This document shows positions 2,007 to 42,400 of a stretch of 64,000 nucleotides of DNA, one piece after another. The position numbers and the translations under genes were made by a program. The notes beneath the pieces are model-generated. The model did not search any database, was not told the DNA's origin, and was given only the letters and a program-made list of their open reading frames with translations. Every line of letters starts with the position of its first letter. The stretch's first letter is position 1. Source of the DNA: Heteronotia binoei (lineage: Eukaryota); the NCBI RefSeq assembly GCF_032191835.1, contig NC_083234.1, positions 29,016,001 to 29,080,000 of the forward strand. Reading direction: 5' to 3'.

Positions 2007-2188
2007 ATCTTCTTCGTGGTCTCTGTGCATTCACACATATGGGTATTCCTCCAGAATGGCCCTGACCTCGGAGAGTTCAAAGCAATCTTGATCGTAGATC
2101 TGGCGCGCCTCCCCCTCGTCCTGGGGCGGAGCCACCGTTTGCGCATGCGCGGACGAGGGGGGAGGCGTCTAGCCACTCAGTTTCTTCC
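2007..2188. repeat. DIRS left inverted terminal repeat
   Basis: 2031-2188 is the reverse complement of 7885-8042 with no mismatch seen by eye. 2007-2044 is complementary to ICR 7725-7762. Confidence 0.95.
2106..2167. promoter_or_regulatory. Candidate ITR promoter: hairpin enclosing a GC box and an NRF1-type palindrome
   Basis: CGCCTCCCCCTCGTCC (2106-2121) pairs with GGACGAGGGGGGAGGCG (2151-2167). The loop holds GGGGCGGAG (2123-2131) and TGCGCATGCGCG (2140-2151). Function is inferred. Confidence 0.5.
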
Positions 2189-2378
2189 TTACCGCTGACC
2201 CGATCGCACCTACCTCGTTGATCTCCAACTTCCTCATTGCAATCTTCAGCAAACTACCTCTTTCTTCAAACCTACTTCAGTCTTTCATCTTCACCGGGTA
2301 TCGTATAAAAAAAAAAAAAAAAACCCTTCCTCACTATCTTTCGGACTTTCTCCCTCACCCCCCCCCCCCCGGGAGCGG

Positions 2379-4712
2379 ATGGAAGGAAGGGACAAGGTCA
2401 CTTTCAAACGCTGCACGCGCTGCTCTGCCAAGATCCCATCGTCTGACGGGCACTCCCTCTGCCTTTTCTGCCTCGGGGAGACCCACCGCACGGATTCCTG
2501 CGTCCACTGTAGCCAGTTCGGCAAACAGGCCCGCAAGAATCGCGCCGCGAGACTCCGGAGCCATCTAATGGAAGCCTCCCTCCGACCGCATGGCGCGCAA
2601 CACCAGCCTCCGCCATCTTCCCCACTCCACGTGGGAACGGCGCAGCCGGCAGCTTCCGTGGCTCAAGGTCCCTGCAAGCCTAAGTCCGGCAAACATACCA
2701 CAAAGTCGGACGGCACCAAGAAGCGTCACCGCTCCGAGTCCGCCCACGTGGATCCGACGAGCACCGCCAGCATAAAGAAAACCAAGTCTGCGCATCGACC
2801 CTCCGACCAATCTGGGCAACCCACGAGCTCGAACCCGGCCACGAGCTCGACCGCAGTAAGATCGACATCGAACCCGACCACGAGTTCCGCCTCGGCTCCA
2901 AAGACACCAACAGTGAAATCGACGCCGACGCCGAACATCACACCATTGGAGATTGTGCGCATCTCCTCCAAGTCGCCGTCAATCACGACCTCTCCACCCG
3001 ACCAAATACTCGAGGTCCACTCCCCTGCAAAGAGCCACCAACCACTCGACCCCCGCGCCTTCATAGATCTCTCTAAGCCGCTGGAAGCCCAATCCCTGAC
3101 CAGGGAACCTTCAACTCCGAGAGTCCTTTTACCACGGCAACCCACACCAAGAGCTCACAGCCGCCAACGCTCACGCAGTCGCCGACGCTCCCGCAGCCAC
3201 CGTAGGCAACGTTCCCGTAGCCGCCGTAGGGACAGCCGCCAACGTTCCCGCAGCCGCCGCAGTCACCGTTCCCACAGCCGCCGTAGAGAGAGATACTCCT
3301 ACTACTCCCCGTCGAGATCTAGATCTCGCTCTCCCCGGACCCGACGAGGGCACCGACGATCCCCCTCTCACGACCGCTACCGCTCGGATTCGAGAGGGCG
3401 CCACTACCACAGCTACCATGACTCCCCTCGGTACCGAGACCGCGCGGACAGACACGATCGAACCCGACACTACGAAGCGTCCCCGCGCACACACCACCTC
3501 GACTACGACACACTCGCTCAGCTCCATGACGAACGCAGTCGCCTCGACCTCGAGCCGAAACTGCCCTCACCACCGGGCTCCATACACACTGCGACAAACA
3601 AACAGCTGCCACCTGTAGAAACCCAACCAGACCTACAGCACGGATCCGACGACGACTCCGAAGCCGAACTCTCCGAATCTGACCGCTCCTCGGGGTCGGA
3701 CCTACAATCCCCGGCTTCCGACATAGCTAAACCGGCGGACCTGTCTCCATCAGAGGGTCCGAAATCCTACCTTGACTTAGTCTCCAATATGGCGAACTCG
3801 CTGAATCTGAAGCTTAACACAGACGCACCCAGGGTCTCGGACGTCGTCTTTGACCTCGTACATTCAGACCTCCCAGCAAGCTCCTCTCTCCCTATGCTTC
3901 CCGTCCTCCTCGAGACACTCAAGGAAGCCTGGGACAAGCCGGCATCGGTACCTCCAACCTCCAAAAGAGTCGAAGCCCTTTACAAGATCCACGCACCCGA
4001 TGCAAAGTTCTTGTTCACCCACCCGGCTCCCAACTCCATAATAGTTCACTCCTCCTCGAAATCGAAACAGACGAGACACCCGGTACCCCCGGAAAGAGAG
4101 GGCAAGAAGCTCGATACTATAGGGCGAAAGATATACTCGCTCACTACAGCTGCAACAAAGATACAAAACTACACGGCATGCTTCTCAGCATATGCATACA
4201 ACCTAACCACCTATCTCAACACCCTGATACCCTCCTTACCCGAGGAATCACAAAAACCAGCCTCTAACGCCCTACAGGAATTAGCAAGACTGAGCAAGCA
4301 GCAGATTAACACAGCTCGCCATGCTGCACAGTGCTCCTCCAAAGCCTTGGCCTCAGCGATAGCCTTACGCAGACATGCGTGGCTTAGGTCCTCGTCACTC
4401 CAACCGGACATTAAATATAAGATTGAGGACTTACCCTTCGACGGCCTTGGACTGTTTAACGCAGCCACAGACGACATCCTCACATCAGTCGATGACGGCA
4501 GGAAACGGGCGAAACGCTTGGGGGTCTCCCAACACCAACCCCAGTTCAACAGGCAGAGGAACTGGAAGTCCACCTACCATAAGGGTACCAAGTCCCCCAG
4601 ACAGCAAACCTCATGGAGACGGAAAACCCCCCAGTCCAAGCTGTCATCCCAATACAGACCACGCACGCAAACTTCCAAAAAGACCGCAGCTACCTCAAAA
4701 CCGTCTCTTTGA
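2379..4712 (+). CDS. DIRS ORF1, Gag-like protein (777 aa)
   Basis: N-terminal C-x2-C-x9-H-x2-C-x2-C-x4-H-x4-C-x2-C cluster, an S/T/P-rich linker, an RS-rich block, and a C-terminal helical region (KKLDTIGRKIY...LRRHAWLRSS...IEDLPFDGLGLF) typical of DIRS Gag / LAP2alpha-like domains. Confidence 0.9.
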   Translation: MEGRDKVTFKRCTRCSAKIPSSDGHSLCLFCLGETHRTDSCVHCSQFGKQARKNRAARLRSHLMEASLRPHGAQHQPPPSSPLHVGTAQPAASVAQGPCKPKSGKHTTKSDGTKKRHRSESAHVDPTSTASIKKTKSAHRPSDQSGQPTSSNPATSSTAVRSTSNPTTSSASAPKTPTVKSTPTPNITPLEIVRISSKSPSITTSPPDQILEVHSPAKSHQPLDPRAFIDLSKPLEAQSLTREPSTPRVLLPRQPTPRAHSRQRSRSRRRSRSHRRQRSRSRRRDSRQRSRSRRSHRSHSRRRERYSYYSPSRSRSRSPRTRRGHRRSPSHDRYRSDSRGRHYHSYHDSPRYRDRADRHDRTRHYEASPRTHHLDYDTLAQLHDERSRLDLEPKLPSPPGSIHTATNKQLPPVETQPDLQHGSDDDSEAELSESDRSSGSDLQSPASDIAKPADLSPSEGPKSYLDLVSNMANSLNLKLNTDAPRVSDVVFDLVHSDLPASSSLPMLPVLLETLKEAWDKPASVPPTSKRVEALYKIHAPDAKFLFTHPAPNSIIVHSSSKSKQTRHPVPPEREGKKLDTIGRKIYSLTTAATKIQNYTACFSAYAYNLTTYLNTLIPSLPEESQKPASNALQELARLSKQQINTARHAAQCSSKALASAIALRRHAWLRSSSLQPDIKYKIEDLPFDGLGLFNAATDDILTSVDDGRKRAKRLGVSQHQPQFNRQRNWKSTYHKGTKSPRQQTSWRRKTPQSKLSSQYRPRTQTSKKTAATSKPSL

Positions 4713-6615
4713 CCACCCTGCCACGAGACGTCCAGTTTCCCTCCTTCAGCCAAACCCCCACACCCGTCTACAACAGTTTTACTCCGCCTGGAGAGACATA
4801 ACATCGGACGCTTGGGTCCTCACCATCATACAGAGAGGATACCTAATAGAATTCACATCCACCCCGAAACATCACAGATTTCTTACCACCCCATCGTCCG
4901 CACCGCTACAGACAGAAATCGCGTCCCTGCTAGACAAGAACGCGATAGAACCAGTCCCACCCCAATACCATCGCACCGGGTTCTATTCCCGCTACTTCCT
5001 GGTGCCGAAAAGGGACGGAGGTCTCCGCCCGATCCTCGACCTTCGCAAACTAAACCTCCACATCACCTACAAGAAATTCCGTATGATCACACTCCAGGCA
5101 ATCCTTCCGCTTATCCCAGAACGCTCCTGGATGGCATCCATAGATCTACAGGACGCCTACTTCCACATCACAATCAACCACCATCACAGAAGATTTCTCA
5201 GATTCGCCGTCGGGGAGCAACACTTCCAGTTCCGCTCTCTCCCATTCGGCCTATCGACGGCCCCGAGAGTCTTCACCAAATGCATGGCAGTGGTTGCCGC
5301 ATCATTACGACAACGGAGCATATCAATATACCCATATATAGACGACTGGCTGATCGTCGCCCATTCAAGGGAACAACTCCAACTGGACGTCTCCACTACC
5401 CTCTCCCTCTTGGCCACTCTCGGCCTCCAGGTCAACTTATCAAAATCCAAACTAACCCCCACTCAGAGAATTCAGTTCATAGGAGCAGACATCTCCACAA
5501 TCTCCCAAACAGCCTCTCTACCGCACGACAGAGTACTCAGCATACAATCTCTGGCCAACACCATCATTGCCCGGCGCTCCCAGACAGCCCTAACGTTTCA
5601 AAGGATGCTAGGCCTAATGGCAGCAACCACCGCAGTCCTATGCTTCGCAAAACTTCACATACGACCCCTGCAGATGTGGTTCGTCAGGACCTTTCATCCT
5701 CACACACAGCACCAATCCACACTCCTGACCCTCCCATCGCACATCGTAACATCCCTCAAATGGTGGACGATGGAACATCACCTCCGCACGGGCATGCCCT
5801 TCAAACAAGCCCCTCCCTCAGTGATCGTCACCACGGACGCCTCCAGGTGGGGATGGGGAGCCCACTTAGGAACCCTCACAGTCCAAGGCCAATGGTCGGA
5901 CTACGAGCGGTCCCTCCACATCAACTGCCTAGAGCTCCTTGCAGTACACAAAGCGCTGAGATCCTTTCTCCCATCGCTACGGAATCAGCACGTCCAGGTC
6001 ACTTCCGACAACATCGCCACGGTCTTCTACATCAACAGACAGGGAGGCACCGCCTCCATCAGACTCTGCAAGAGGGCCCTGGCATTGTGGCATTGGAGCA
6101 TCACCCAGGGCATCTTCCTCACGGCCGTTCACCTACCAGGGACCGAGAATACCCAGGCGGATGCCCTGAGCCGCCACTCGACCAACAACCACGAGTGGTC
6201 TATCAGCACTCAATACATCCAACAAATCTTCAAAACCTTCGGAACCCCGAGCATAGATGTATTTGCCTCACCATCAAATGCCCAGTGCACCCACTTCTAC
6301 ATGAGAGGTCCACCATCCCAGCTCTCCAGAGGGGATGCATTCCTCCAAACCTGGAAGGGAAAACTACACTACCTGTTTCCCCCCATCCCACTCATCACAA
6401 GGGTCCTGCAGAAAATCCAAACAGACCGCACGAACTGCATCCTCATAACCCCATGGTGGCCACGCCAACCCTGGTTCACCACCCTCCTGTCTCTGTCCAA
6501 CGGGACATTCCTAATCCTCCCACAAGCACAGGACCTCCTCTCCCAACAAGACGGGAAGGTCCTACACCACAACCCGGCATCCCTCAAATTGACGGCCTGG
6601 AGAATCAGTTTTTAG
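4375..6615 (+). CDS. DIRS ORF2: reverse transcriptase, RNase H and DNA adenine methyltransferase-like domain (746 aa from first ATG)
   Basis: RT motifs RPILDLRKLN, IDLQDAYFHI, LPFGLSTAPRVFTK and YIDD (5335-5346). RNase H motifs TTDASRWGWG, INCLELLAV, SDN and NTQADALSR. MT motifs IDVFAS and YLFPP. The true translation start is uncertain. Confidence 0.96.
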   Translation: MRGLGPRHSNRTLNIRLRTYPSTALDCLTQPQTTSSHQSMTAGNGRNAWGSPNTNPSSTGRGTGSPPTIRVPSPPDSKPHGDGKPPSPSCHPNTDHARKLPKRPQLPQNRLFDHPATRRPVSLLQPNPHTRLQQFYSAWRDITSDAWVLTIIQRGYLIEFTSTPKHHRFLTTPSSAPLQTEIASLLDKNAIEPVPPQYHRTGFYSRYFLVPKRDGGLRPILDLRKLNLHITYKKFRMITLQAILPLIPERSWMASIDLQDAYFHITINHHHRRFLRFAVGEQHFQFRSLPFGLSTAPRVFTKCMAVVAASLRQRSISIYPYIDDWLIVAHSREQLQLDVSTTLSLLATLGLQVNLSKSKLTPTQRIQFIGADISTISQTASLPHDRVLSIQSLANTIIARRSQTALTFQRMLGLMAATTAVLCFAKLHIRPLQMWFVRTFHPHTQHQSTLLTLPSHIVTSLKWWTMEHHLRTGMPFKQAPPSVIVTTDASRWGWGAHLGTLTVQGQWSDYERSLHINCLELLAVHKALRSFLPSLRNQHVQVTSDNIATVFYINRQGGTASIRLCKRALALWHWSITQGIFLTAVHLPGTENTQADALSRHSTNNHEWSISTQYIQQIFKTFGTPSIDVFASPSNAQCTHFYMRGPPSQLSRGDAFLQTWKGKLHYLFPPIPLITRVLQKIQTDRTNCILITPWWPRQPWFTTLLSLSNGTFLILPQAQDLLSQQDGKVLHHNPASLKLTAWRISF

Positions 6616-7631
6616 ACTTTCCCCCGGACGTTCGCCAAGTCCTAGTGAACTCTAGAAAACCATCCACTAGGAAAGCCTATCTACTAAAATGGAAGCGCTT
6701 CACCCACTACGCCTCTCAACACAACTTTGACCCTAACTGCGCTACCATCTCTCAGGTATTAACTTATACCTTAGCACTCTCAAGAACAGGCCTCTCATAC
6801 TCCTCCCTGAAGGTACACCTCGCAGCTATCTCTGCCTTCCACCCCCACATCGGGGGAACAACAGTCTTCTCTCATCATGCCACGAAGGCCTTCCTCAAGG
6901 GCATCATTCGCCTACACCCTCCTGTCAGACAAATCCTTCCAACCTGGAGCCTCTCTCTAGTGCTCAGCCAGCTCATGAAACCACCCTTTGAGCCCATGGC
7001 ATCTATTCCACTGCACCTGCTATCGTGGAAAACAGCACTACTCACGGCTCTCACCACAGGCAAGAGGGCTAGCGACATCTGTGCCCTGAGGGCGGACCCA
7101 CCCTACACAATCTTTCACAGTAACAGGGTGGTCCTTCGCCCCGACCCGACCTTCCTACCAAAGGTCGTCTCTCCATTCCACCTAGGGAAACAGTCAACCA
7201 TACCAGCCTTTTTCCAGCACCCCTCGGACGCAGGCCAGAGGGCTCTCCACAACTTGGACGCGCGCAGAGCGCTAGCTTTCTACATAGACAGAACTCGAGA
7301 ATTCCGTAAGGATCCGAGACTCTTTGTCACCTACGCCACCCATAATAAGGGCAGCAAAATATCTACTCAGAGGCTCTCTAAGTGGCTCGTTGCCACCATA
7401 GAACTCTGCTACCAACTGGCGAAACAACCAGTCCCGCAACACATACGAGCTCATTCTACTAGAGCCGTCGCCACCTCGTCAGCTTTCACGAAGGGCATCC
7501 CTATTGAGGACATCTGCGATGCAGCGGTCTGGTCCTCCACGTCTACCTTCGCCTCGCACTACGCTCTTGACGTTCGTGCCCGGCGTGATGCCTCCTTCGG
7601 ACAGGCTGTACTTCGCTCCATCTTCGACTGA
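4812..7631 (+). CDS. DIRS ORF3, tyrosine recombinase (recognisable domain from about 6616; frame open from 4713)
   Basis: Catalytic residues R (TGKRASD, 7065), HxxR (HSTR, 7452-7463), W (AAVWS) and Y (ASHY, 7560). Core-binding region STRKAYLLKWKRF. The N-terminal two thirds overlap ORF2. Confidence 0.94.
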   Translation: MGPHHHTERIPNRIHIHPETSQISYHPIVRTATDRNRVPARQERDRTSPTPIPSHRVLFPLLPGAEKGRRSPPDPRPSQTKPPHHLQEIPYDHTPGNPSAYPRTLLDGIHRSTGRLLPHHNQPPSQKISQIRRRGATLPVPLSPIRPIDGPESLHQMHGSGCRIITTTEHINIPIYRRLADRRPFKGTTPTGRLHYPLPLGHSRPPGQLIKIQTNPHSENSVHRSRHLHNLPNSLSTARQSTQHTISGQHHHCPALPDSPNVSKDARPNGSNHRSPMLRKTSHTTPADVVRQDLSSSHTAPIHTPDPPIAHRNIPQMVDDGTSPPHGHALQTSPSLSDRHHGRLQVGMGSPLRNPHSPRPMVGLRAVPPHQLPRAPCSTQSAEILSPIATESARPGHFRQHRHGLLHQQTGRHRLHQTLQEGPGIVALEHHPGHLPHGRSPTRDREYPGGCPEPPLDQQPRVVYQHSIHPTNLQNLRNPEHRCICLTIKCPVHPLLHERSTIPALQRGCIPPNLEGKTTLPVSPHPTHHKGPAENPNRPHELHPHNPMVATPTLVHHPPVSVQRDIPNPPTSTGPPLPTRREGPTPQPGIPQIDGLENQFLDFPPDVRQVLVNSRKPSTRKAYLLKWKRFTHYASQHNFDPNCATISQVLTYTLALSRTGLSYSSLKVHLAAISAFHPHIGGTTVFSHHATKAFLKGIIRLHPPVRQILPTWSLSLVLSQLMKPPFEPMASIPLHLLSWKTALLTALTTGKRASDICALRADPPYTIFHSNRVVLRPDPTFLPKVVSPFHLGKQSTIPAFFQHPSDAGQRALHNLDARRALAFYIDRTREFRKDPRLFVTYATHNKGSKISTQRLSKWLVATIELCYQLAKQPVPQHIRAHSTRAVATSSAFTKGIPIEDICDAAVWSSTSTFASHYALDVRARRDASFGQAVLRSIFD

Positions 7632-7724
7632 CCACCGTAAGTACCACTCTCATTACATTCTGGTCTAACCTTGCATACTTTTTACAGATCCAGCACCCGC
7701 CTCCGAAGGGATAGCTCGCTAATC

Positions 7725-7820
7725 ACCCATATGTGTGAATGCACAGAGACCACGAAGAAGATGGACAGGTTTCTTACCTGTAACTGGTGATCTTCGAGTG
7801 GTCATCTGTGCAATCACACA
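7725..7820. repeat. DIRS internal complementary region (ICR)
   Basis: 7725-7762 is the reverse complement of 2007-2044 (left end). 7763-7820 is the reverse complement of 8036-8093 (right end). Confidence 0.95.
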
Positions 7821-7884
7821 GACCCACCCAGCCTTCCCCGCTGCTGGACACTCACCTAGCACGTCTTCCACCTGTCCGGTGGCG

Positions 7885-8093
7885 GGAAGAAACTGAGTGG
7901 CTAGACGCCTCCCCCCTCGTCCGCGCATGCGCAAACGGTGGCTCCGCCCCAGGACGAGGGGGAGGCGCGCCAGATCTACGATCAAGATTGCTTTGAACTC
8001 TCCGAGGTCAGGGCCATTCTGGAGGAATACCCATATGTGTGATTGCACAGATGACCACTCGAAGATCACCAGTTACAGGTAAGAAACCTGTCC
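7885..8093. repeat. DIRS right inverted terminal repeat plus right extension
   Basis: Matches the left ITR to 8042, then a slightly diverged segment, then the extension TCACCAGTTACAGGTAAGAAACCTGTCC that is matched only by the ICR. Confidence 0.95.
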
Positions 8094-8215
8094 TTCTTTG
8101 TATGGGTTGAGTTCCATCAATATAGTACCACAGAATGTGTGCTCTTACAGCAGTACTTCTTCAGATACCAAAATACTAGCAGATATATGGACTTTCGTGC
8201 ACTTAGGGCCCAAAC

Positions 8216-8702
8216 TAGGGCTGCCAATCCCCAGTTGGGGGCAGTGGAACCCTTAGTTTGGAGGCCTTTCCCCAGCTTCAGGGTTATCAGAAAGGGGGGG
8301 GGGGATGTCTGCTGGGCACTTCATTATACCCTATGGAACCAGTCCCCATAGGATATAATGGAGAATCAATCTGTGACTATCTGGGGCTCTCAAGGGGGGC
8401 TGTTTTTTTTTGTTTTTTTAGCTAGAGGCACCAAATTTTCAGCATGGTATTCAGTGCCTCTCCTCAAAACTCCCCTCAAGTTTCGAAAAGATTGGACCAG
8501 GGGGTCTAATTCTATGAGTCCCAAAAGGTGCCCCTATTCTTCATTATTTCCAAATGGAGGGAAGGCATTTAAAAGGTGTGCAGTCCCTTTAAATGTGATG
8601 GCCAGAACCCCCTTTGGAGTTCAATCATGCTTGTCACACCTTAGCTCCTGGCTCCAGCCCCAAAGTCCCCAGATATTTCCTGAGTTGGACCTGGCAACCC
8701 TA
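8216..8702. mobile_element. Non-autonomous hAT-like DNA transposon
   Basis: TIRs TAGGGCTGCCA and TGGCAACCCTA. 8-bp TSD GCCCAAAC / GCCAAAAC (7 of 8 match). Confidence 0.8.
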
Positions 8703-39473: not shown

Positions 39474-42400
39474 TTATACCATTGTTTCATCTCCACCAGA
39501 TCCTTTATTATCATTTTCTTTTGTCTTTCTATCAAGCCACATATACAATTTCTTCCATTTATTGCTTGCTACTGGTTTGGCCTCCCCTTTCAGGAGAGCT
39601 GAAAGTATGTCCGCTTTAGCAACATGAAGTACTTTTTCAACCAATTCATCTAAATTTGGGCATCTCCCTTTCCTCCAATATTTAGCTAATAAGATTCTAG
39701 CAGCTGTAAGGATATAAATCACCAAATACTCATCTTCTTTTAATAGCTCCTTTCTTACCATAGATAATAACATAACCTCTGGTTTAAATTGGAAATCCAT
39801 ACATAGTACCTCCTTTAAAAATACAAAGACTTTCACCCAAAACTTTTTCACAATGAAGCAAGTCCACCATAAATGGTAAAATGTACCTGTTTTAGTTCCA
39901 CATTTCCAACATTTAGGTGACAAACTAGTGTTCATCTTTGATAACTGGACTGGAGTAATATACCACCTATGGAACATTTTGAAAAAAAATTTCCCTATAA
40001 CTTACTGGCTTGATGATTGTATAGTTATTTTTACACAATTGTAACCATTGTTCTAAGTCAATGGTCTTTCCCAAATTTTGTGACCATTTGATCATCGATT
40101 CTTTCACCAATTCATCTTCTAAATTTAGTTGCATCATATAGTTATACACTTTTTAAATTGATTTGTCCTCCTTTGCCGATAATATTTTGTCAAAATCAAA
40201 ATTCCCTTTGGTGAAGCCAATTAATTTATCTTTATTAAATTTAGCCATAATCTGCAAATTTAACCACCAGTCTATTTTTATTTCTCTCTGTTCTAGGTCA
40301 TCCATCTTTCTTAACTTGTCATCATCATCCAACAACTCCTGATATGTCACAATATTCGAAGAGTCCCATAGTTGTGGTTTTATAGATGCTTCTACTGGGG
40401 AAATCCACCTGGGCGTCTTACTATATATCTTTCTTTTTATTTTTATCCAAACACTGAAAATGGTTTTCCAAATTAAATGATTAGTAAAATATTTATGACC
40501 TTTATCTATATACCACAGATTTGCATGCCAACCAGTCGAAAGATCATATCTTTCTAAAGCAAGAATTCTCTTATTCTCCAAATTTATCCAATCTTTCAGC
40601 CAGACCGTCACATTAGCAATATAATACGATTCCCAATCTGGTAAACTTAATCCACCATTTTCTTTTTTATCACTAAGTATTTTCCATTTAACCCTTGGCT
40701 TTTTCCCTTGCCAAATAAATGTCCTGACAGCTTTATTCAATTTATTTTTAAAATCCTTCTTAATTGAAAAAATGATTGTTTGAAGTAAAAACATCACTTT
40801 CGGGACAATAGTAATCTTGATAAGAGCAATTCTGCCCATAAAAGACAGTTGCATACCTTCCCATTTTTTCAATAAGTTTCCAACTTCTTTGAGCAGAATC
40901 ACAAAGTTGTTATCATATACACTACTACACTTACTTGTCAAATTTATTCCCAAATATTTCACTTTCTTTTCACTTTTAAAACCAGCTCTTATTTCCAGGT
41001 TATTAATCTCCTGTGTTGTCATGTTCTTTGTTAGTATTTTAGATTTCTGTTTATTTATTTTCAAACCTGTGGCTTGCCCATAATCATCTATTTCTTTCAA
41101 AACCTCATCTATTGATTCCAATGGGTTTTGCAAAATTAAAACAATATCATCAGCATATGTCAGTAACTTATATGTCTCACCCTTTACCTTCAAGCCTCTA
41201 ATACTACCATTACTTCTAATAGATTCATTAAAAACCTCCAATGATAAAATAAAAAGTAATGGGGAGAGTGGGCAGCCTTGTCTAGTACCCTTACAAACCT
41301 TTATTTCTTCAGTAGCTTCACCATTTACAATTATTTTAACTTTCTGTTCACTATAAATTGCTTGAACATTTCTTATAAAATCCTCTCCAAACTCCATAGT
41401 CTTAAGCTGTTGCAACAGAAAATTCCAGTCTAAATTATCAAAGGCTTTTTCCGCGTCAAGTAAAATTAATGCCAATTGTTTATCTCTATTCGATTCATAA
41501 TACTCCAGAATATCTAAAATAATTCTAATATTTGTTCTCAAATGCCTTTTTGGAAGGAAACCTGTTTGGTCCGGGTGGATCTATACAATCAAAAAAATTT
41601 TCAATCTATTTGCGAGTATAGAAGCGTAAATCTTATAATCAACATTAAGTAACACAATCGGTCTAAAGTTCTTAATTTCATCATAATCACAATCCATTTT
41701 TGGTATAAGGGCTATATTCGCATATCTCCAAGAGCTTGGTATTTCTGCAGTTAACCACACTTCCTCTATCATTTTTTTAAATTGGTAAATTAAACTTTCC
41801 CTAAACACGATGTAATACTTGGCGGGGAGGCCGTCCGGACCTGCCGCCTTATTCTTCTTTTGTTTGCTCCAAGCCTCTTCAACCTCAAACATCGTAACCG
41901 GACTATTCATTATTCTCTTCTGTTCATCCATTAATTTAAGAAAAGATCTACTCAAAAGGTAGTCTTTCTGCTTTTTCTGATCTATTTCCACTGAATCATA
42001 TAACTGTGCATAAAATTCCTTAGTTATCTTTTTCAGGTCTTCTGAAAGATATTTAGGATTCCCTTCTTTGTCCTTCAGTACCTTTATTGTTCTTTTCTCC
42101 TGTTCTTTCTTAATTTTATACGCAAGCCATCTTCCTGATTTGATAGCATTCTCAAAAAACTGCTGTTTGGCAAAAAGAACTTTCCTCTCCATTTCCTCCA
42201 AAAACATCACATGAATCTTATGTTGCAACAGTTTTATCTTATTCTTAATCTCCTGAATATTTGGTGTCTTTTTAAATTGTTTTTCCTGTTGTTTTAAGTG
42301 TTCAGTTATTTCTTCTAATTTTTTATTTTCTTCCTGTCTCTTATGTACACTAAAATTCTTAATCAAGCCTCTAACATAAGCTTTACTCGTTTCCCACACA

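What the first reader, a model, noticed from the sequence alone, without database searches (positions are those of the whole stretch)
2007..8093. Intact, potentially mobile DIRS1-like tyrosine-recombinase retrotransposon in a reptile genome
Seen: all three ORFs are free of stops and frameshifts, all RT, RNase H and YR catalytic motifs are present, the 158-bp ITR cores look identical, the ICR matches both ends exactly, and CpGs are not eroded. Every other TE in the window is decayed. Known: DIRS1-like elements replicate through a circular DNA and integrate with a tyrosine recombinase instead of a DDE integrase, and mammals keep only domesticated relics. Inference: this is a very recent insertion from an active family, giving a complete amniote RT plus recombinase plus methyltransferase system. 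The class is known, but this family may be uncharacterised.
Basis: partly seen in the sequence, partly recalled or inferred. Interest (0 to 1): 0.78.

Follow-up and report, generated by a model that had tools for sequence, protein, structure and literature searches.

The report
Intact young DIRS retrotransposon in gecko
This is a complete, very recently inserted copy of a DIRS1-type "jumping gene" that integrates with a tyrosine recombinase; it looks able to move, but intact DIRS elements are already known in lizards, so it is a clean new example and not a new kind of element.

Summary
Window 2007-8093 is a 6,087-bp DIRS1-like retrotransposon.

- **Repeats:** the inverted terminal repeats share a 158-bp identical core. 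The internal complementary region matches the left end 38/38 and the right end 58/58.
- **Coding:** three reading frames are open, for a gag-like protein, RT-RNase H-methyltransferase-like, and a tyrosine recombinase. All catalytic residues sit in family-invariant alignment columns. The recombinase model folds like Cre.
- **Youth:** CpG observed/expected is 0.85 in the element against about 0.2 in the flanks.

The architecture nearly matches the published Anolis elements AcDIRS1 and AcDIRS2. The proteins are at most 54% identical to anything in a 5.8-billion-protein set. The recombinase branches near the base of a squamate clade, so this is a distinct lineage of a known kind.

RNA libraries of the source species hold the family, mostly at 95-99% identity. 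Reads run past the right end into several different flanks, so there are several loci. Differences between copies are 32/39 synonymous in the working frames, so the lineage evolved under selection for function.

Present-day mobility is not shown. I have no DNA copy count, no empty site, and no element-terminated transcript.

Earlier notes of this scan report other intact young DIRS copies on other DNA of this genome.

The parts
2007..8093 (+). Whole DIRS1-like element, 6,087 bp
   Evidence: Ends are fixed by where complementarity to the ICR stops. GC is 0.555 and CpG o/e 0.85, against 0.43-0.46 and about 0.2 in the flanks.
2007..2188 (+). Left terminus. Divergent ITR part 2007-2030; conserved ITR core 2031-2188. 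The core carries a GC box (2123-2132) and the palindrome TGCGCATGCGCG (2140-2151), framed by the inverted repeat 2106-2121 / 2151-2167.
   Evidence: A promoter role is inferred from the DIRS-1 literature, not tested.
2189..2378 (+). 5' untranslated leader with an A17 run (2307-2323) and a C13 run (2358-2370)
   Evidence: The C-run length varies among reads (table 4).
2379..4712 (+). ORF1, gag-like, 777 aa. N-terminal Cys/His motif 2403-2582; Arg/Ser-rich middle 3087-3446; LAP2alpha-like C-terminal domain 3762-4526.
   Evidence: LAP2alpha chain 2V0X, E = 1.4e-3 over aa 497-699. Pfam PF11560, E = 0.015. 34% identity to a Sceloporus protein that carries PF11560. 31% (C-terminal part) and 48% (N-terminal motif) identity to a Gopherus protein.
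4707..4713 (+). gag stop in the context CTT-TGA-C, where the conserved pol frame (+1) and the recombinase frame (in frame with gag) both take over
   Evidence: Conservation of pol starts only at about 4762.
4375..6615 (+). ORF2, pol, 746 aa. RT 5002-5487; RNase H 5821-6174; Dam-like methyltransferase-like domain 6187-6612.
   Evidence: Pfam RVT_1 2e-23, RT_RNaseH 1.9e-5, Dam 3.7e-4 (the Dam hit is below the curated cut-off). Alignment A2 with 21 relatives.
4713..6578 (+). Stop-free spacer in the gag frame, overlapping pol and leading into the recombinase
   Evidence: 0 stops observed against 8-12 expected in 2,000 synonymous shuffles of pol (fraction with zero stops <= 0.0005). The third frame has 26 stops against 25.7 expected. 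Only 3/17 variants are synonymous in this frame.
6579..7631 (+). Tyrosine recombinase domain (350 aa) and its TGA stop
   Evidence: Pfam Phage_int_SAM_1 1.6e-4 and Phage_integrase 7.9e-4. 154 homologues. AF2 model pLDDT 88. Best fold matches are Cre recombinase, E = 1e-10, TM 0.66-0.70.
7637..7687 (+). Intron-like 51-nt stretch with a GTAAGT donor, a CTAAC branch site at 7665-7669 and a TTTTTACAG acceptor
   Evidence: No spliced read was seen, and a 200-nt RNA-run contig at 7544-7743 is identical to the window and unspliced.
7725..7820 (+). Internal complementary region: left ICR 7725-7762, right ICR 7763-7820
   Evidence: 38/38 and 58/58 complementary to the two termini. The right ICR forms a 58-bp stem with the right end when folded as single-stranded DNA, z = -15.
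7885..8093 (+). Right terminus. Conserved ITR core 7885-8042; divergent part about 8043-8067; right extension of about 26 nt up to 8093.
   Evidence: Reads from other copies leave the sequence at 8091 and 8095 into different flanks (table 7).

Best explanation
Window 2007-8093 is a structurally complete, coding-competent and very young copy of a DIRS1-like tyrosine-recombinase retrotransposon. It belongs to a multi-copy squamate (apparently gecko) lineage that was transposing until very recently and may still be.

Inferred mechanism, from the DIRS model and the anatomy seen here:
1. Transcription starts inside the left ITR and ends inside the right ITR, so the RNA lacks both outer tips.
2. Gag-like ORF1 is translated to its TGA stop. 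Pol (RT-RNase H-MT-like) is probably reached by a +1 shift at CTT-TGA-C. The recombinase is probably reached by read-through along the stop-free spacer.
3. RT copies the RNA. The ICR, complementary to both tips, serves as the template or splint that restores the missing ends and brings them together.
4. The Cre-like recombinase inserts the product at a short target that resembles the element's first bases (CTT or TCTT), without a target-site duplication.

Shown here: the anatomy, the intact motifs, the youth, several loci, the RNA-library signal, and purifying selection between copies. Inferred: every step of expression and replication, and present-day mobility.
For: - Structure: ITR, ICR and ORFs.
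- Domains and catalytic residues.
- Cre-like fold.
- Gag with both conserved modules.
- Youth: 240 paired ITR/ICR positions with no unexplained mismatch, and CpG o/e 0.85 against about 0.2.
- Family: RNA runs of the same species label hold it. 8-28% of laid reads or contigs are >= 99% alike and the rest 95-99%. Loose ends at 8091 and 8095 run into several different flanks.
- Selection: variants between copies are synonymous 14/16 in gag, 12/17 in pol and 6/6 in the recombinase, against 3/16, 3/17 and 1/6 in the wrong frames.
- Recoding layout: CTT-TGA-C and a spacer frame with 0 stops against 8-12 expected.
- Architecture almost identical to AcDIRS1/2 in Table 3 of PMC3266345.
- The ICR is experimentally essential in DIRS-1 (PMC7192593).
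Against: - No genomic copy count and no empty or polymorphic site. No DNA reads were available.
- The RNA libraries look unstranded. Depth is low: about 7 and 2 reads per kb per million reads, summed over all copies >= 95% alike.
- About a fifth of laid reads run on into unlike sequence, including across the right end. Part of the signal is therefore read-through, intronic RNA or contaminating DNA rather than element-terminated transcripts.
- Most reads differ from this copy by 1-5%, so this locus itself may be silent.
- There is no poly(A) signal in the 3' part.
- The base after the right end (T at 8094) does not match the ICR-predicted junction (A).
- The methyltransferase-like domain scores below Pfam's cut-off. 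Like all its relatives it has F-P-P where canonical N6-adenine methyltransferases, from memory, have (D/N)-P-P.
Confidence: 0.72

Rival explanations
1. The copy is intact only because it is young. The family has just gone extinct or is fully silenced (DNA methylation, piRNAs), so nothing moves today.
For: No evidence of polymorphism or of element-terminated transcripts. RNA depth is low and some reads cross into flanks. In Dictyostelium, DIRS-1 moves only when RNA interference is disabled (PMC7192593).
Against: CpG o/e of 0.85 in a genome whose background is about 0.2 leaves little time for methylation-driven decay. Several other intact young copies are noted in about 48 Mb scanned (unchecked). 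The metatranscriptome contigs cover 26 of 30 bins.
Confidence: 0.2
2. A recent arrival by horizontal transfer, which would explain the high GC and CpG content and the lack of close relatives in protein databases.
For: Element GC is 0.555 against 0.43-0.46 in the host. The best protein identity anywhere is 54%.
Against: The recombinase sits inside a well-supported squamate clade (96/91). It branches just after the leopard gecko sequence and before the iguanian and Varanus sequences, which mirrors host phylogeny. Family copies already differ by 1-5% and show purifying selection, so the lineage has resided here for some time. TE proteins are usually masked out of annotations, which explains the missing close hits.
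Confidence: 0.05
3. Not a transposition product: a segmental duplication, an assembly collapse, or host-domesticated genes.
For: Homopolymer runs (A17, C13) in the leader are error-prone in assemblies.
Against: The ends coincide to the base with the ICR-defined termini. Composition switches sharply at both ends. Reads show the same right end joined to other flanks. The full ITR-ICR apparatus is kept, which a domesticated gene would not need.
Confidence: 0.02

Closest known systems
AcDIRS1 / AcDIRS2 of Anolis carolinensis (Piednoel et al. 2011, PMC3266345; Repbase DIRS-1_Acar)
   Same: Same plan and nearly the same dimensions.
- Size: 6,087 bp here against 5,938 / 5,997 bp.
- Divergent ITR: 24 nt against 26.
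- Conserved ITR: 158 nt against 140 / 136.
- Right extension: about 26 nt against 26 / 28.
- ICR halves: 38 and 58 nt against 40-58 / 39-60.
- There is no left extension in either.
- The CTT at the element start pairs with AAG in the ICR, as in AcDIRS1.
- There is a long ORF overlap, as in AcDIRS2.
   Different: The proteins are far apart. The best Anolis recombinase hits are 47-52% identical, and no Anolis protein is among the top RT hits. The element branches outside the iguanian/Varanus group in the recombinase tree. The nucleotide sequences of AcDIRS1/2 were not available for comparison.
DIRS-1 of Dictyostelium discoideum (founding member; Malicki et al. 2020, PMC7192593)
   Same: ITRs plus an ICR complementary to both tips. 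Gag-like ORF, RT-RNase H-MT-like pol, and a tyrosine recombinase with overlapping frames. The ICR was shown to be essential for retrotransposition, and the proteins act in trans.
   Different: ORF order and overlaps differ: in DIRS-1 the recombinase ORF is second. This element has a LAP2alpha-like gag with an Arg/Ser-rich region. No experiment exists for any vertebrate DIRS.
Turtle DIRS1-like elements and the mammalian LAP2alpha domain of TMPO / ZNF451 (Abascal et al. 2015, PMC4495291)
   Same: The C-terminal domain of ORF1 matches the LAP2alpha domain. That paper traces the domain to DIRS1-like ORF1. A Gopherus protein shares both the N-terminal Cys/His motif and the C-terminal domain.
   Different: The mammalian genes are single domesticated exons without RT, recombinase or repeats. 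The turtle proteins are only 31-54% identical.
Xenopus DIRS-like families with potentially active copies (PMC9210276)
   Same: Same criteria for 'potentially active' (all ORFs, conserved ITRs and ICR). Recent amplification waves and transcript evidence are reported there.
   Different: Amphibian host. The frog recombinases are 34-38% identical and fall outside the amniote/coelacanth group.

Membership tests
DIRS1-like superfamily (order DIRS) | Inverted terminal repeats instead of LTRs | tested here: met
   167-nt arms with a 158-bp identical core
DIRS1-like superfamily (order DIRS) | Internal complementary region made of two adjoining halves, complementary to the left tip and to the right tip | tested here: met
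   7725-7762 pairs with 2007-2044 (38/38). 7763-7820 pairs with 8036-8093 (58/58).
DIRS1-like superfamily (order DIRS) | Tyrosine recombinase with R-K-H-x-x-R-(H/W)-Y, and no DDE integrase or aspartic protease | tested here: met
   R163, K195, H292, R295, W318 and Y328 lie in invariant or nearly invariant columns. Cre-like fold. No integrase or protease family in the Pfam scans.
DIRS1-like superfamily (order DIRS) | RT-RNase H pol followed by a methyltransferase-like domain | tested here: met
   RVT_1 2e-23, RT_RNaseH 1.9e-5. Dam-like 3.7e-4, below Pfam's cut-off, but the domain aligns along its whole length with 21 relatives. Catalytic activity was not assessed.
DIRS1-like superfamily (order DIRS) | Gag-like first ORF | tested here: met
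   LAP2alpha-like domain. Homology to ORF1-type proteins of Sceloporus and Gopherus.
DIRS1-like superfamily (order DIRS) | No target-site duplication; a 3-bp junction motif shared with the target | tested here: inconclusive
   The flanks show no duplication. TTCTT after the right end matches the element's start ATCTT at 4 of 5 positions, including CTT. This rests on a single insertion.
Ngaro / PAT / VIPER superfamilies | Split direct repeats instead of ITR plus ICR | tested here: not met
   The only direct repeat is the short Arg/Ser-coding repeat inside ORF1.
Published Anolis families AcDIRS1 / AcDIRS2 | High nucleotide identity to the family reference (conventional 80% rule) | not testable with these tools
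   No Repbase or Dfam access. Protein identity to the best Anolis hits is 47-52%, which makes membership of the same family very unlikely.
Currently active (autonomous) element | Insertion polymorphism, new insertions, or replication intermediates | not testable with these tools

The most novel reading that the evidence does not exclude
This gecko DIRS lineage is transposing today. It would have polymorphic insertions and abundant miniature ITR-ICR-ITR derivatives mobilised in trans by copies like this one. It would express its three proteins from one RNA through a single stop codon (termination, +1 shift, read-through). That would make it the first tractable amniote system for tyrosine-recombinase retrotransposition.
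Probability: 0.35. Interest if true: 0.55.

Novelty: new member of a known kind. Interest (0 to 1): 0.3.

Why it matters
DIRS elements are the least understood order of retrotransposons. Only Dictyostelium DIRS-1 has been tested experimentally. The role of the methyltransferase-like domain is unknown, and so is the way pol and the recombinase get translated.

A clean, undecayed amniote copy with exact ends gives unambiguous coordinates for every part: the termini, both ICR halves, the recoding site and the intron-like stretch. It also gives a predicted empty site. Population and expression tests of activity become straightforward.

It is also a living relative of the element whose gag became the mammalian LAP2alpha domain.

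It does not change what is known about the class. Young, complete DIRS copies were described in Anolis in 2011 and in frogs and fish.

Tried and rejected
I could not fetch the contigs of the closest relatives (P0001/P0122 on one 5.6-kb ENA contig, P0003/P0126 on a 4.8-kb one) to compare their repeats.
- **The search of earlier findings by sequence** returned nothing.
- **PDB sequence search** with the recombinase found nothing. The fold search was needed.
- **First coordinates for the recombinase piece** were out of frame and were corrected.
- **Gag protein search** gave only two hits, because the Arg/Ser-rich region swamped the word index.
- **Flank as a silent control** failed. The right flank 8150-8349 is itself a repeat with high depth.
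- **Splicing of 7637-7687:** no joint was seen.
- **CpG decay in other copies:** I tested whether other copies differ from this one mainly by CpG decay. Only 3 of 17 C>T/G>A differences lie at CpGs of this copy, so that argument for youth was dropped.
- **ORF2 start at the ATG at 4375:** rejected. Variants in 4375-4709 are 3/16 synonymous in the pol frame against 14/16 in the gag frame, and relatives are conserved only from about 4762.
- **Spacer as conserved protein sequence:** rejected. Only 3/17 variants are synonymous there, although the frame is kept free of stops.
Full report
**Observation**

The stretch 2007-8093 differs sharply from its surroundings.
- GC is 0.52-0.63 with a strong C-over-G skew, against 0.38-0.47 outside.
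- CpG observed/expected is 0.85 (368 CpGs), against 0.20 (left flank), 0.18 (right flank) and 0.21 (rest of the window).

It holds three long open frames:
- 2379-4712, 777 aa.
- 4375-6615, 746 aa.
- A frame open up to 7631.

- The arms 2022-2188 and 7885-8051 are complementary over 167 nt with one mismatch, at 2030. That leaves a 158-bp identical core, 2031-2188 against 7885-8042.
- 7725-7762 is the perfect reverse complement of the left tip 2007-2044 (38/38).
- The adjoining 7763-7820 is the perfect reverse complement of the right tip 8036-8093 (58/58).
- Complementarity stops at these coordinates on both sides, so the element ends are 2007 and 8093.
- The single ITR mismatch is reproduced in the matching ICR half. 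It is a templated difference of the 'divergent ITR' part, not decay.
- Counting the 144 inner ITR positions plus the two ICR halves, 240 paired positions carry no unexplained difference.

**Proteins**

*ORF2 (pol).* It scores RVT_1 at 2e-23 and RT_RNaseH at 1.9e-5. Its C-terminus scores Dam-like at 3.7e-4, below Pfam's cut-off. In an alignment with 21 relatives the window protein carries every invariant residue (positions checked):
- RT: D257 and Y321-I-D323-D324.
- RNase H: D488, E520, D545 and D596.
- MT-like domain: the family-wide motifs D628-x-F-A and Y666-x-F-P-P, and the P-x-W-P-R-Q-P-W block.

From memory, canonical N6-adenine methyltransferases have (D/N)-P-P-(Y/F) at that spot. All DIRS relatives in the alignment have F-P-P. 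So 'methyltransferase' describes ancestry, not a shown activity.

*Recombinase (6579-7631).* It hits the two phage-integrase Pfam domains weakly and has 154 homologues at E <= 1e-5. R163, K195, H292-S-T-R295, W318 and Y328 fall in invariant or nearly invariant columns. The AlphaFold model from that alignment has mean pLDDT 88. Its best solved-structure matches are Cre recombinase complexes (E = 1e-10, TM 0.66-0.70), followed by XerH, the Tn1549 integrase and lambda integrase.

*ORF1 (gag-like).* It has no Pfam hit at the usual threshold.
- Residues 497-699 match the LAP2alpha C-terminal domain (2V0X, E = 1.4e-3; PF11560, E = 0.015). Abascal et al. traced that domain to ORF1 of DIRS1-like elements (PMC4495291).
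- A Sceloporus protein carrying PF11560 aligns at 34% identity over 360 residues.
- A Gopherus protein shares the C-terminal domain (31%) and the N-terminal Cys/His motif at residues 9-68 (48%).
- ORF1 is therefore full length, with both conserved modules around a lineage-variable Arg/Ser-rich middle.

No integrase, protease or envelope family was found.

**How the frames connect**

- The gag stop sits in the context CTT-TGA-C at 4707-4713.
- ORF2 formally starts at an ATG at 4375 inside gag, but relatives are conserved only from about 4762.
- Variants between family copies in 4375-4709 are synonymous 14/16 in the gag frame and only 3/16 in the pol frame. The upstream part of ORF2 is not coding. 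Pol is most likely entered at or just after the gag stop by a +1 shift.
- The recombinase frame is the gag frame itself. It has no stop from 4713 to 7631.
- Over the 622 codons that overlap pol, synonymous reshuffling of pol gives 8-12 stops on average and a stop-free frame in at most 0.05% of 2,000 trials. The third frame has 26 stops against 25.7 expected.
- Only 3 of 17 variants in the spacer are synonymous in that frame. The frame is kept open, but its amino-acid sequence is not conserved.
- This fits read-through translation into the recombinase. The nearest in-frame ATG, at 6453, is an alternative start.
- Earlier agents of this scan proposed the same layout on other copies. Here I confirmed it for this copy and added the variant test. 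No experiment supports it yet.

**Family and age**

RNA libraries carrying the same species label hold the element. Laid on 2350-8349:
- Two metatranscriptome assemblies cover 26 of 30 bins.
- Two 2026 raw-read RNA runs give 130 and 416 reads from about 10 million reads each. That is roughly 2 and 7 reads per kb per million, summed over all copies at least 95% alike.
- Only 8-28% of reads or contigs are >= 99% identical to this copy. The rest are 95-99%.
- So this copy belongs to a family with a few per cent of internal divergence.
- Reads that match up to 8091 or 8095 then continue into several different sequences (table 7). The same right end therefore exists at several loci, which also confirms the boundary.

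Of the 39 best-supported differences lying in coding regions, 32 are synonymous in the working frame: gag 14/16, pol 12/17, recombinase 6/6. In the wrong frames the counts are 3/16, 3/17 and 1/6. Divergence within the family therefore built up along lineages that had to stay functional. That is the signature of continued transposition rather than of dead copies drifting apart.

For this copy I estimated age under an assumed neutral rate of 1-2e-9 per site per year (my assumption, not measured).
- Zero differences in 240 paired positions puts the insertion under about 3-6 million years at 95%.
- The absence of any disabling change in about 5.25 kb of coding sequence gives a similar bound.
- The near-undepleted CpG content, in a genome whose background is five-fold depleted, argues for much less.

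**Limits of the activity claim**

- The RNA libraries look unstranded.
- About a fifth of laid reads run on into unlike sequence, some across the element's end into flanks. Part of the signal is therefore read-through, intronic RNA or DNA carry-over.
- The right flank, which I had hoped to use as a silent control, is itself a repeat.
- No read shows splicing of the intron-like 7637-7687.
- No start or end pile-up was found.
- There is no AATAAA or ATTAAA in the last 3.6 kb.
- No DNA reads were available, so copy number and presence/absence polymorphism are untested.

**Placement**

- The best protein identity in the 5.8-billion-protein set is 50-52% for pol (metagenome contigs; Pelodiscus 47%, Pogona 45%).
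- For the recombinase it is 53-54% (Varanus, Gopherus, one ENA contig; Anolis 47-52%, Eublepharis 50%).
- In a maximum-likelihood tree of 31 recombinases the window sequence lies inside a supported squamate clade (96/91). It branches after the leopard gecko sequence and before the iguanian/Varanus group, on a long branch of 0.59.
- That mirrors host phylogeny and fits the gecko origin that other agents inferred from host genes (I did not test this directly). It argues against recent horizontal arrival.

**Comparison with the known**

The element meets every structural criterion of the DIRS1-like superfamily and none of the Ngaro/PAT type, since it has no split direct repeats. Its repeat dimensions are almost those of AcDIRS1 and AcDIRS2 in Table 3 of Piednoel et al. 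2011 (PMC3266345).

| Feature | This element | AcDIRS1 / AcDIRS2 |
|---|---|---|
| Size (bp) | 6,087 | 5,938 / 5,997 |
| Divergent ITR (nt) | 24 | 26 / 26 |
| Conserved ITR (nt) | 158 | 140 / 136 |
| Right extension (nt) | about 26 | 26 / 28 |
| ICR halves (nt) | 38 and 58 | 40-58 / 39-60 |
| Left extension | none | none |

- The five bases after the right end (TTCTT) match the element's first five (ATCTT) at four positions, including CTT.
- That corresponds to the start/junction triplet of AcDIRS1 (CTT/AAG) and to the NTT rule in that paper.
- It fits recombination between the junction of the joined ends and a look-alike target. One insertion cannot prove it.
- Piednoel et al. counted 775 DIRS1-like sequences in 42 families in Anolis. 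Potentially active copies with transcripts are reported in Xenopus (PMC9210276).
- The one experimental study found that the ICR is essential, that the proteins act in trans, and that the cDNA intermediates are mostly linear and single-stranded (PMC7192593).

**Verdict**

- The reading as an intact, very young, potentially autonomous DIRS1-like element is supported.
- 'Active family' is likely but unproven.
- It is a new member of a known kind: a distinct, apparently gekkotan lineage with the standard lizard DIRS architecture.
- First-reader notes of this scan list 68 DIRS-related notes in 756 windows of this genome, including other 'intact, very young' copies on other DNA (unchecked). This locus is therefore not unique even within the scan.

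Noticed in passing
window 7750-8149: In the two metatranscriptome assemblies the summed contig depth over the right ICR half and right ITR is about 500-1,100, against about 2-100 over the coding body. This could reflect many ITR/ICR-only miniature DIRS derivatives, which first readers noted elsewhere in this genome, or ITR-derived RNAs.
   Followed up: no
window 2106-2167 (mirrored in 7906-7967): The ITR core carries a GC box (GGGGCGGAGC, 2123-2132) and the palindrome TGCGCATGCGCG (2140-2151). From memory, the palindrome matches the NRF1-type consensus. Both are framed by an 11-16-nt inverted repeat. This could be a CpG-island-type promoter, present in inward orientation at both ends.
   Followed up: partly
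window 7637-7687: A 51-nt stretch right after the recombinase stop has a GTAAGT donor, a CTAAC branch site and a TTTTTACAG acceptor. Reads from other copies keep the CTAAC while the interior differs. No spliced read was seen, and one identical RNA-run contig is unspliced.
   Followed up: partly
window 4707-4713 and 4713-6578: The gag stop lies in CTT-TGA-C. The gag frame stays free of stops for 622 codons across pol (0 against 8-12 expected), although variants there are mostly non-synonymous.
   Followed up: yes
window 3087-3446: ORF1 has an Arg/Ser-rich region resembling splicing-factor RS domains, partly built from a short direct repeat at 3157-3259. A tortoise relative is even annotated as 'serine/arginine repetitive matrix protein 2-like'.
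   Followed up: no
window 2307-2323 and 2358-2370: A17 and C13 homopolymer runs lie in the 5' leader. Reads show an extra C at 2357 (table 4). This may be length variation between copies or sequencing slippage.
   Followed up: no
window 8150-8349: The immediate right flank is another repeat. It shows high RNA-run depth and many loose ends at 8305, 8335 and 8337. It was not identified.
   Followed up: no
window 19376-20399 and 39477-42399 (minus strand): Broken non-LTR reverse-transcriptase ORFs of 159-462 aa, in pieces.
   Followed up: partly
run X3 (organism B): A run labelled as a different organism, from the same study, holds family contigs that are 95-99% alike. Either a related species shares the family, or material crossed between libraries of that study.
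   Followed up: no
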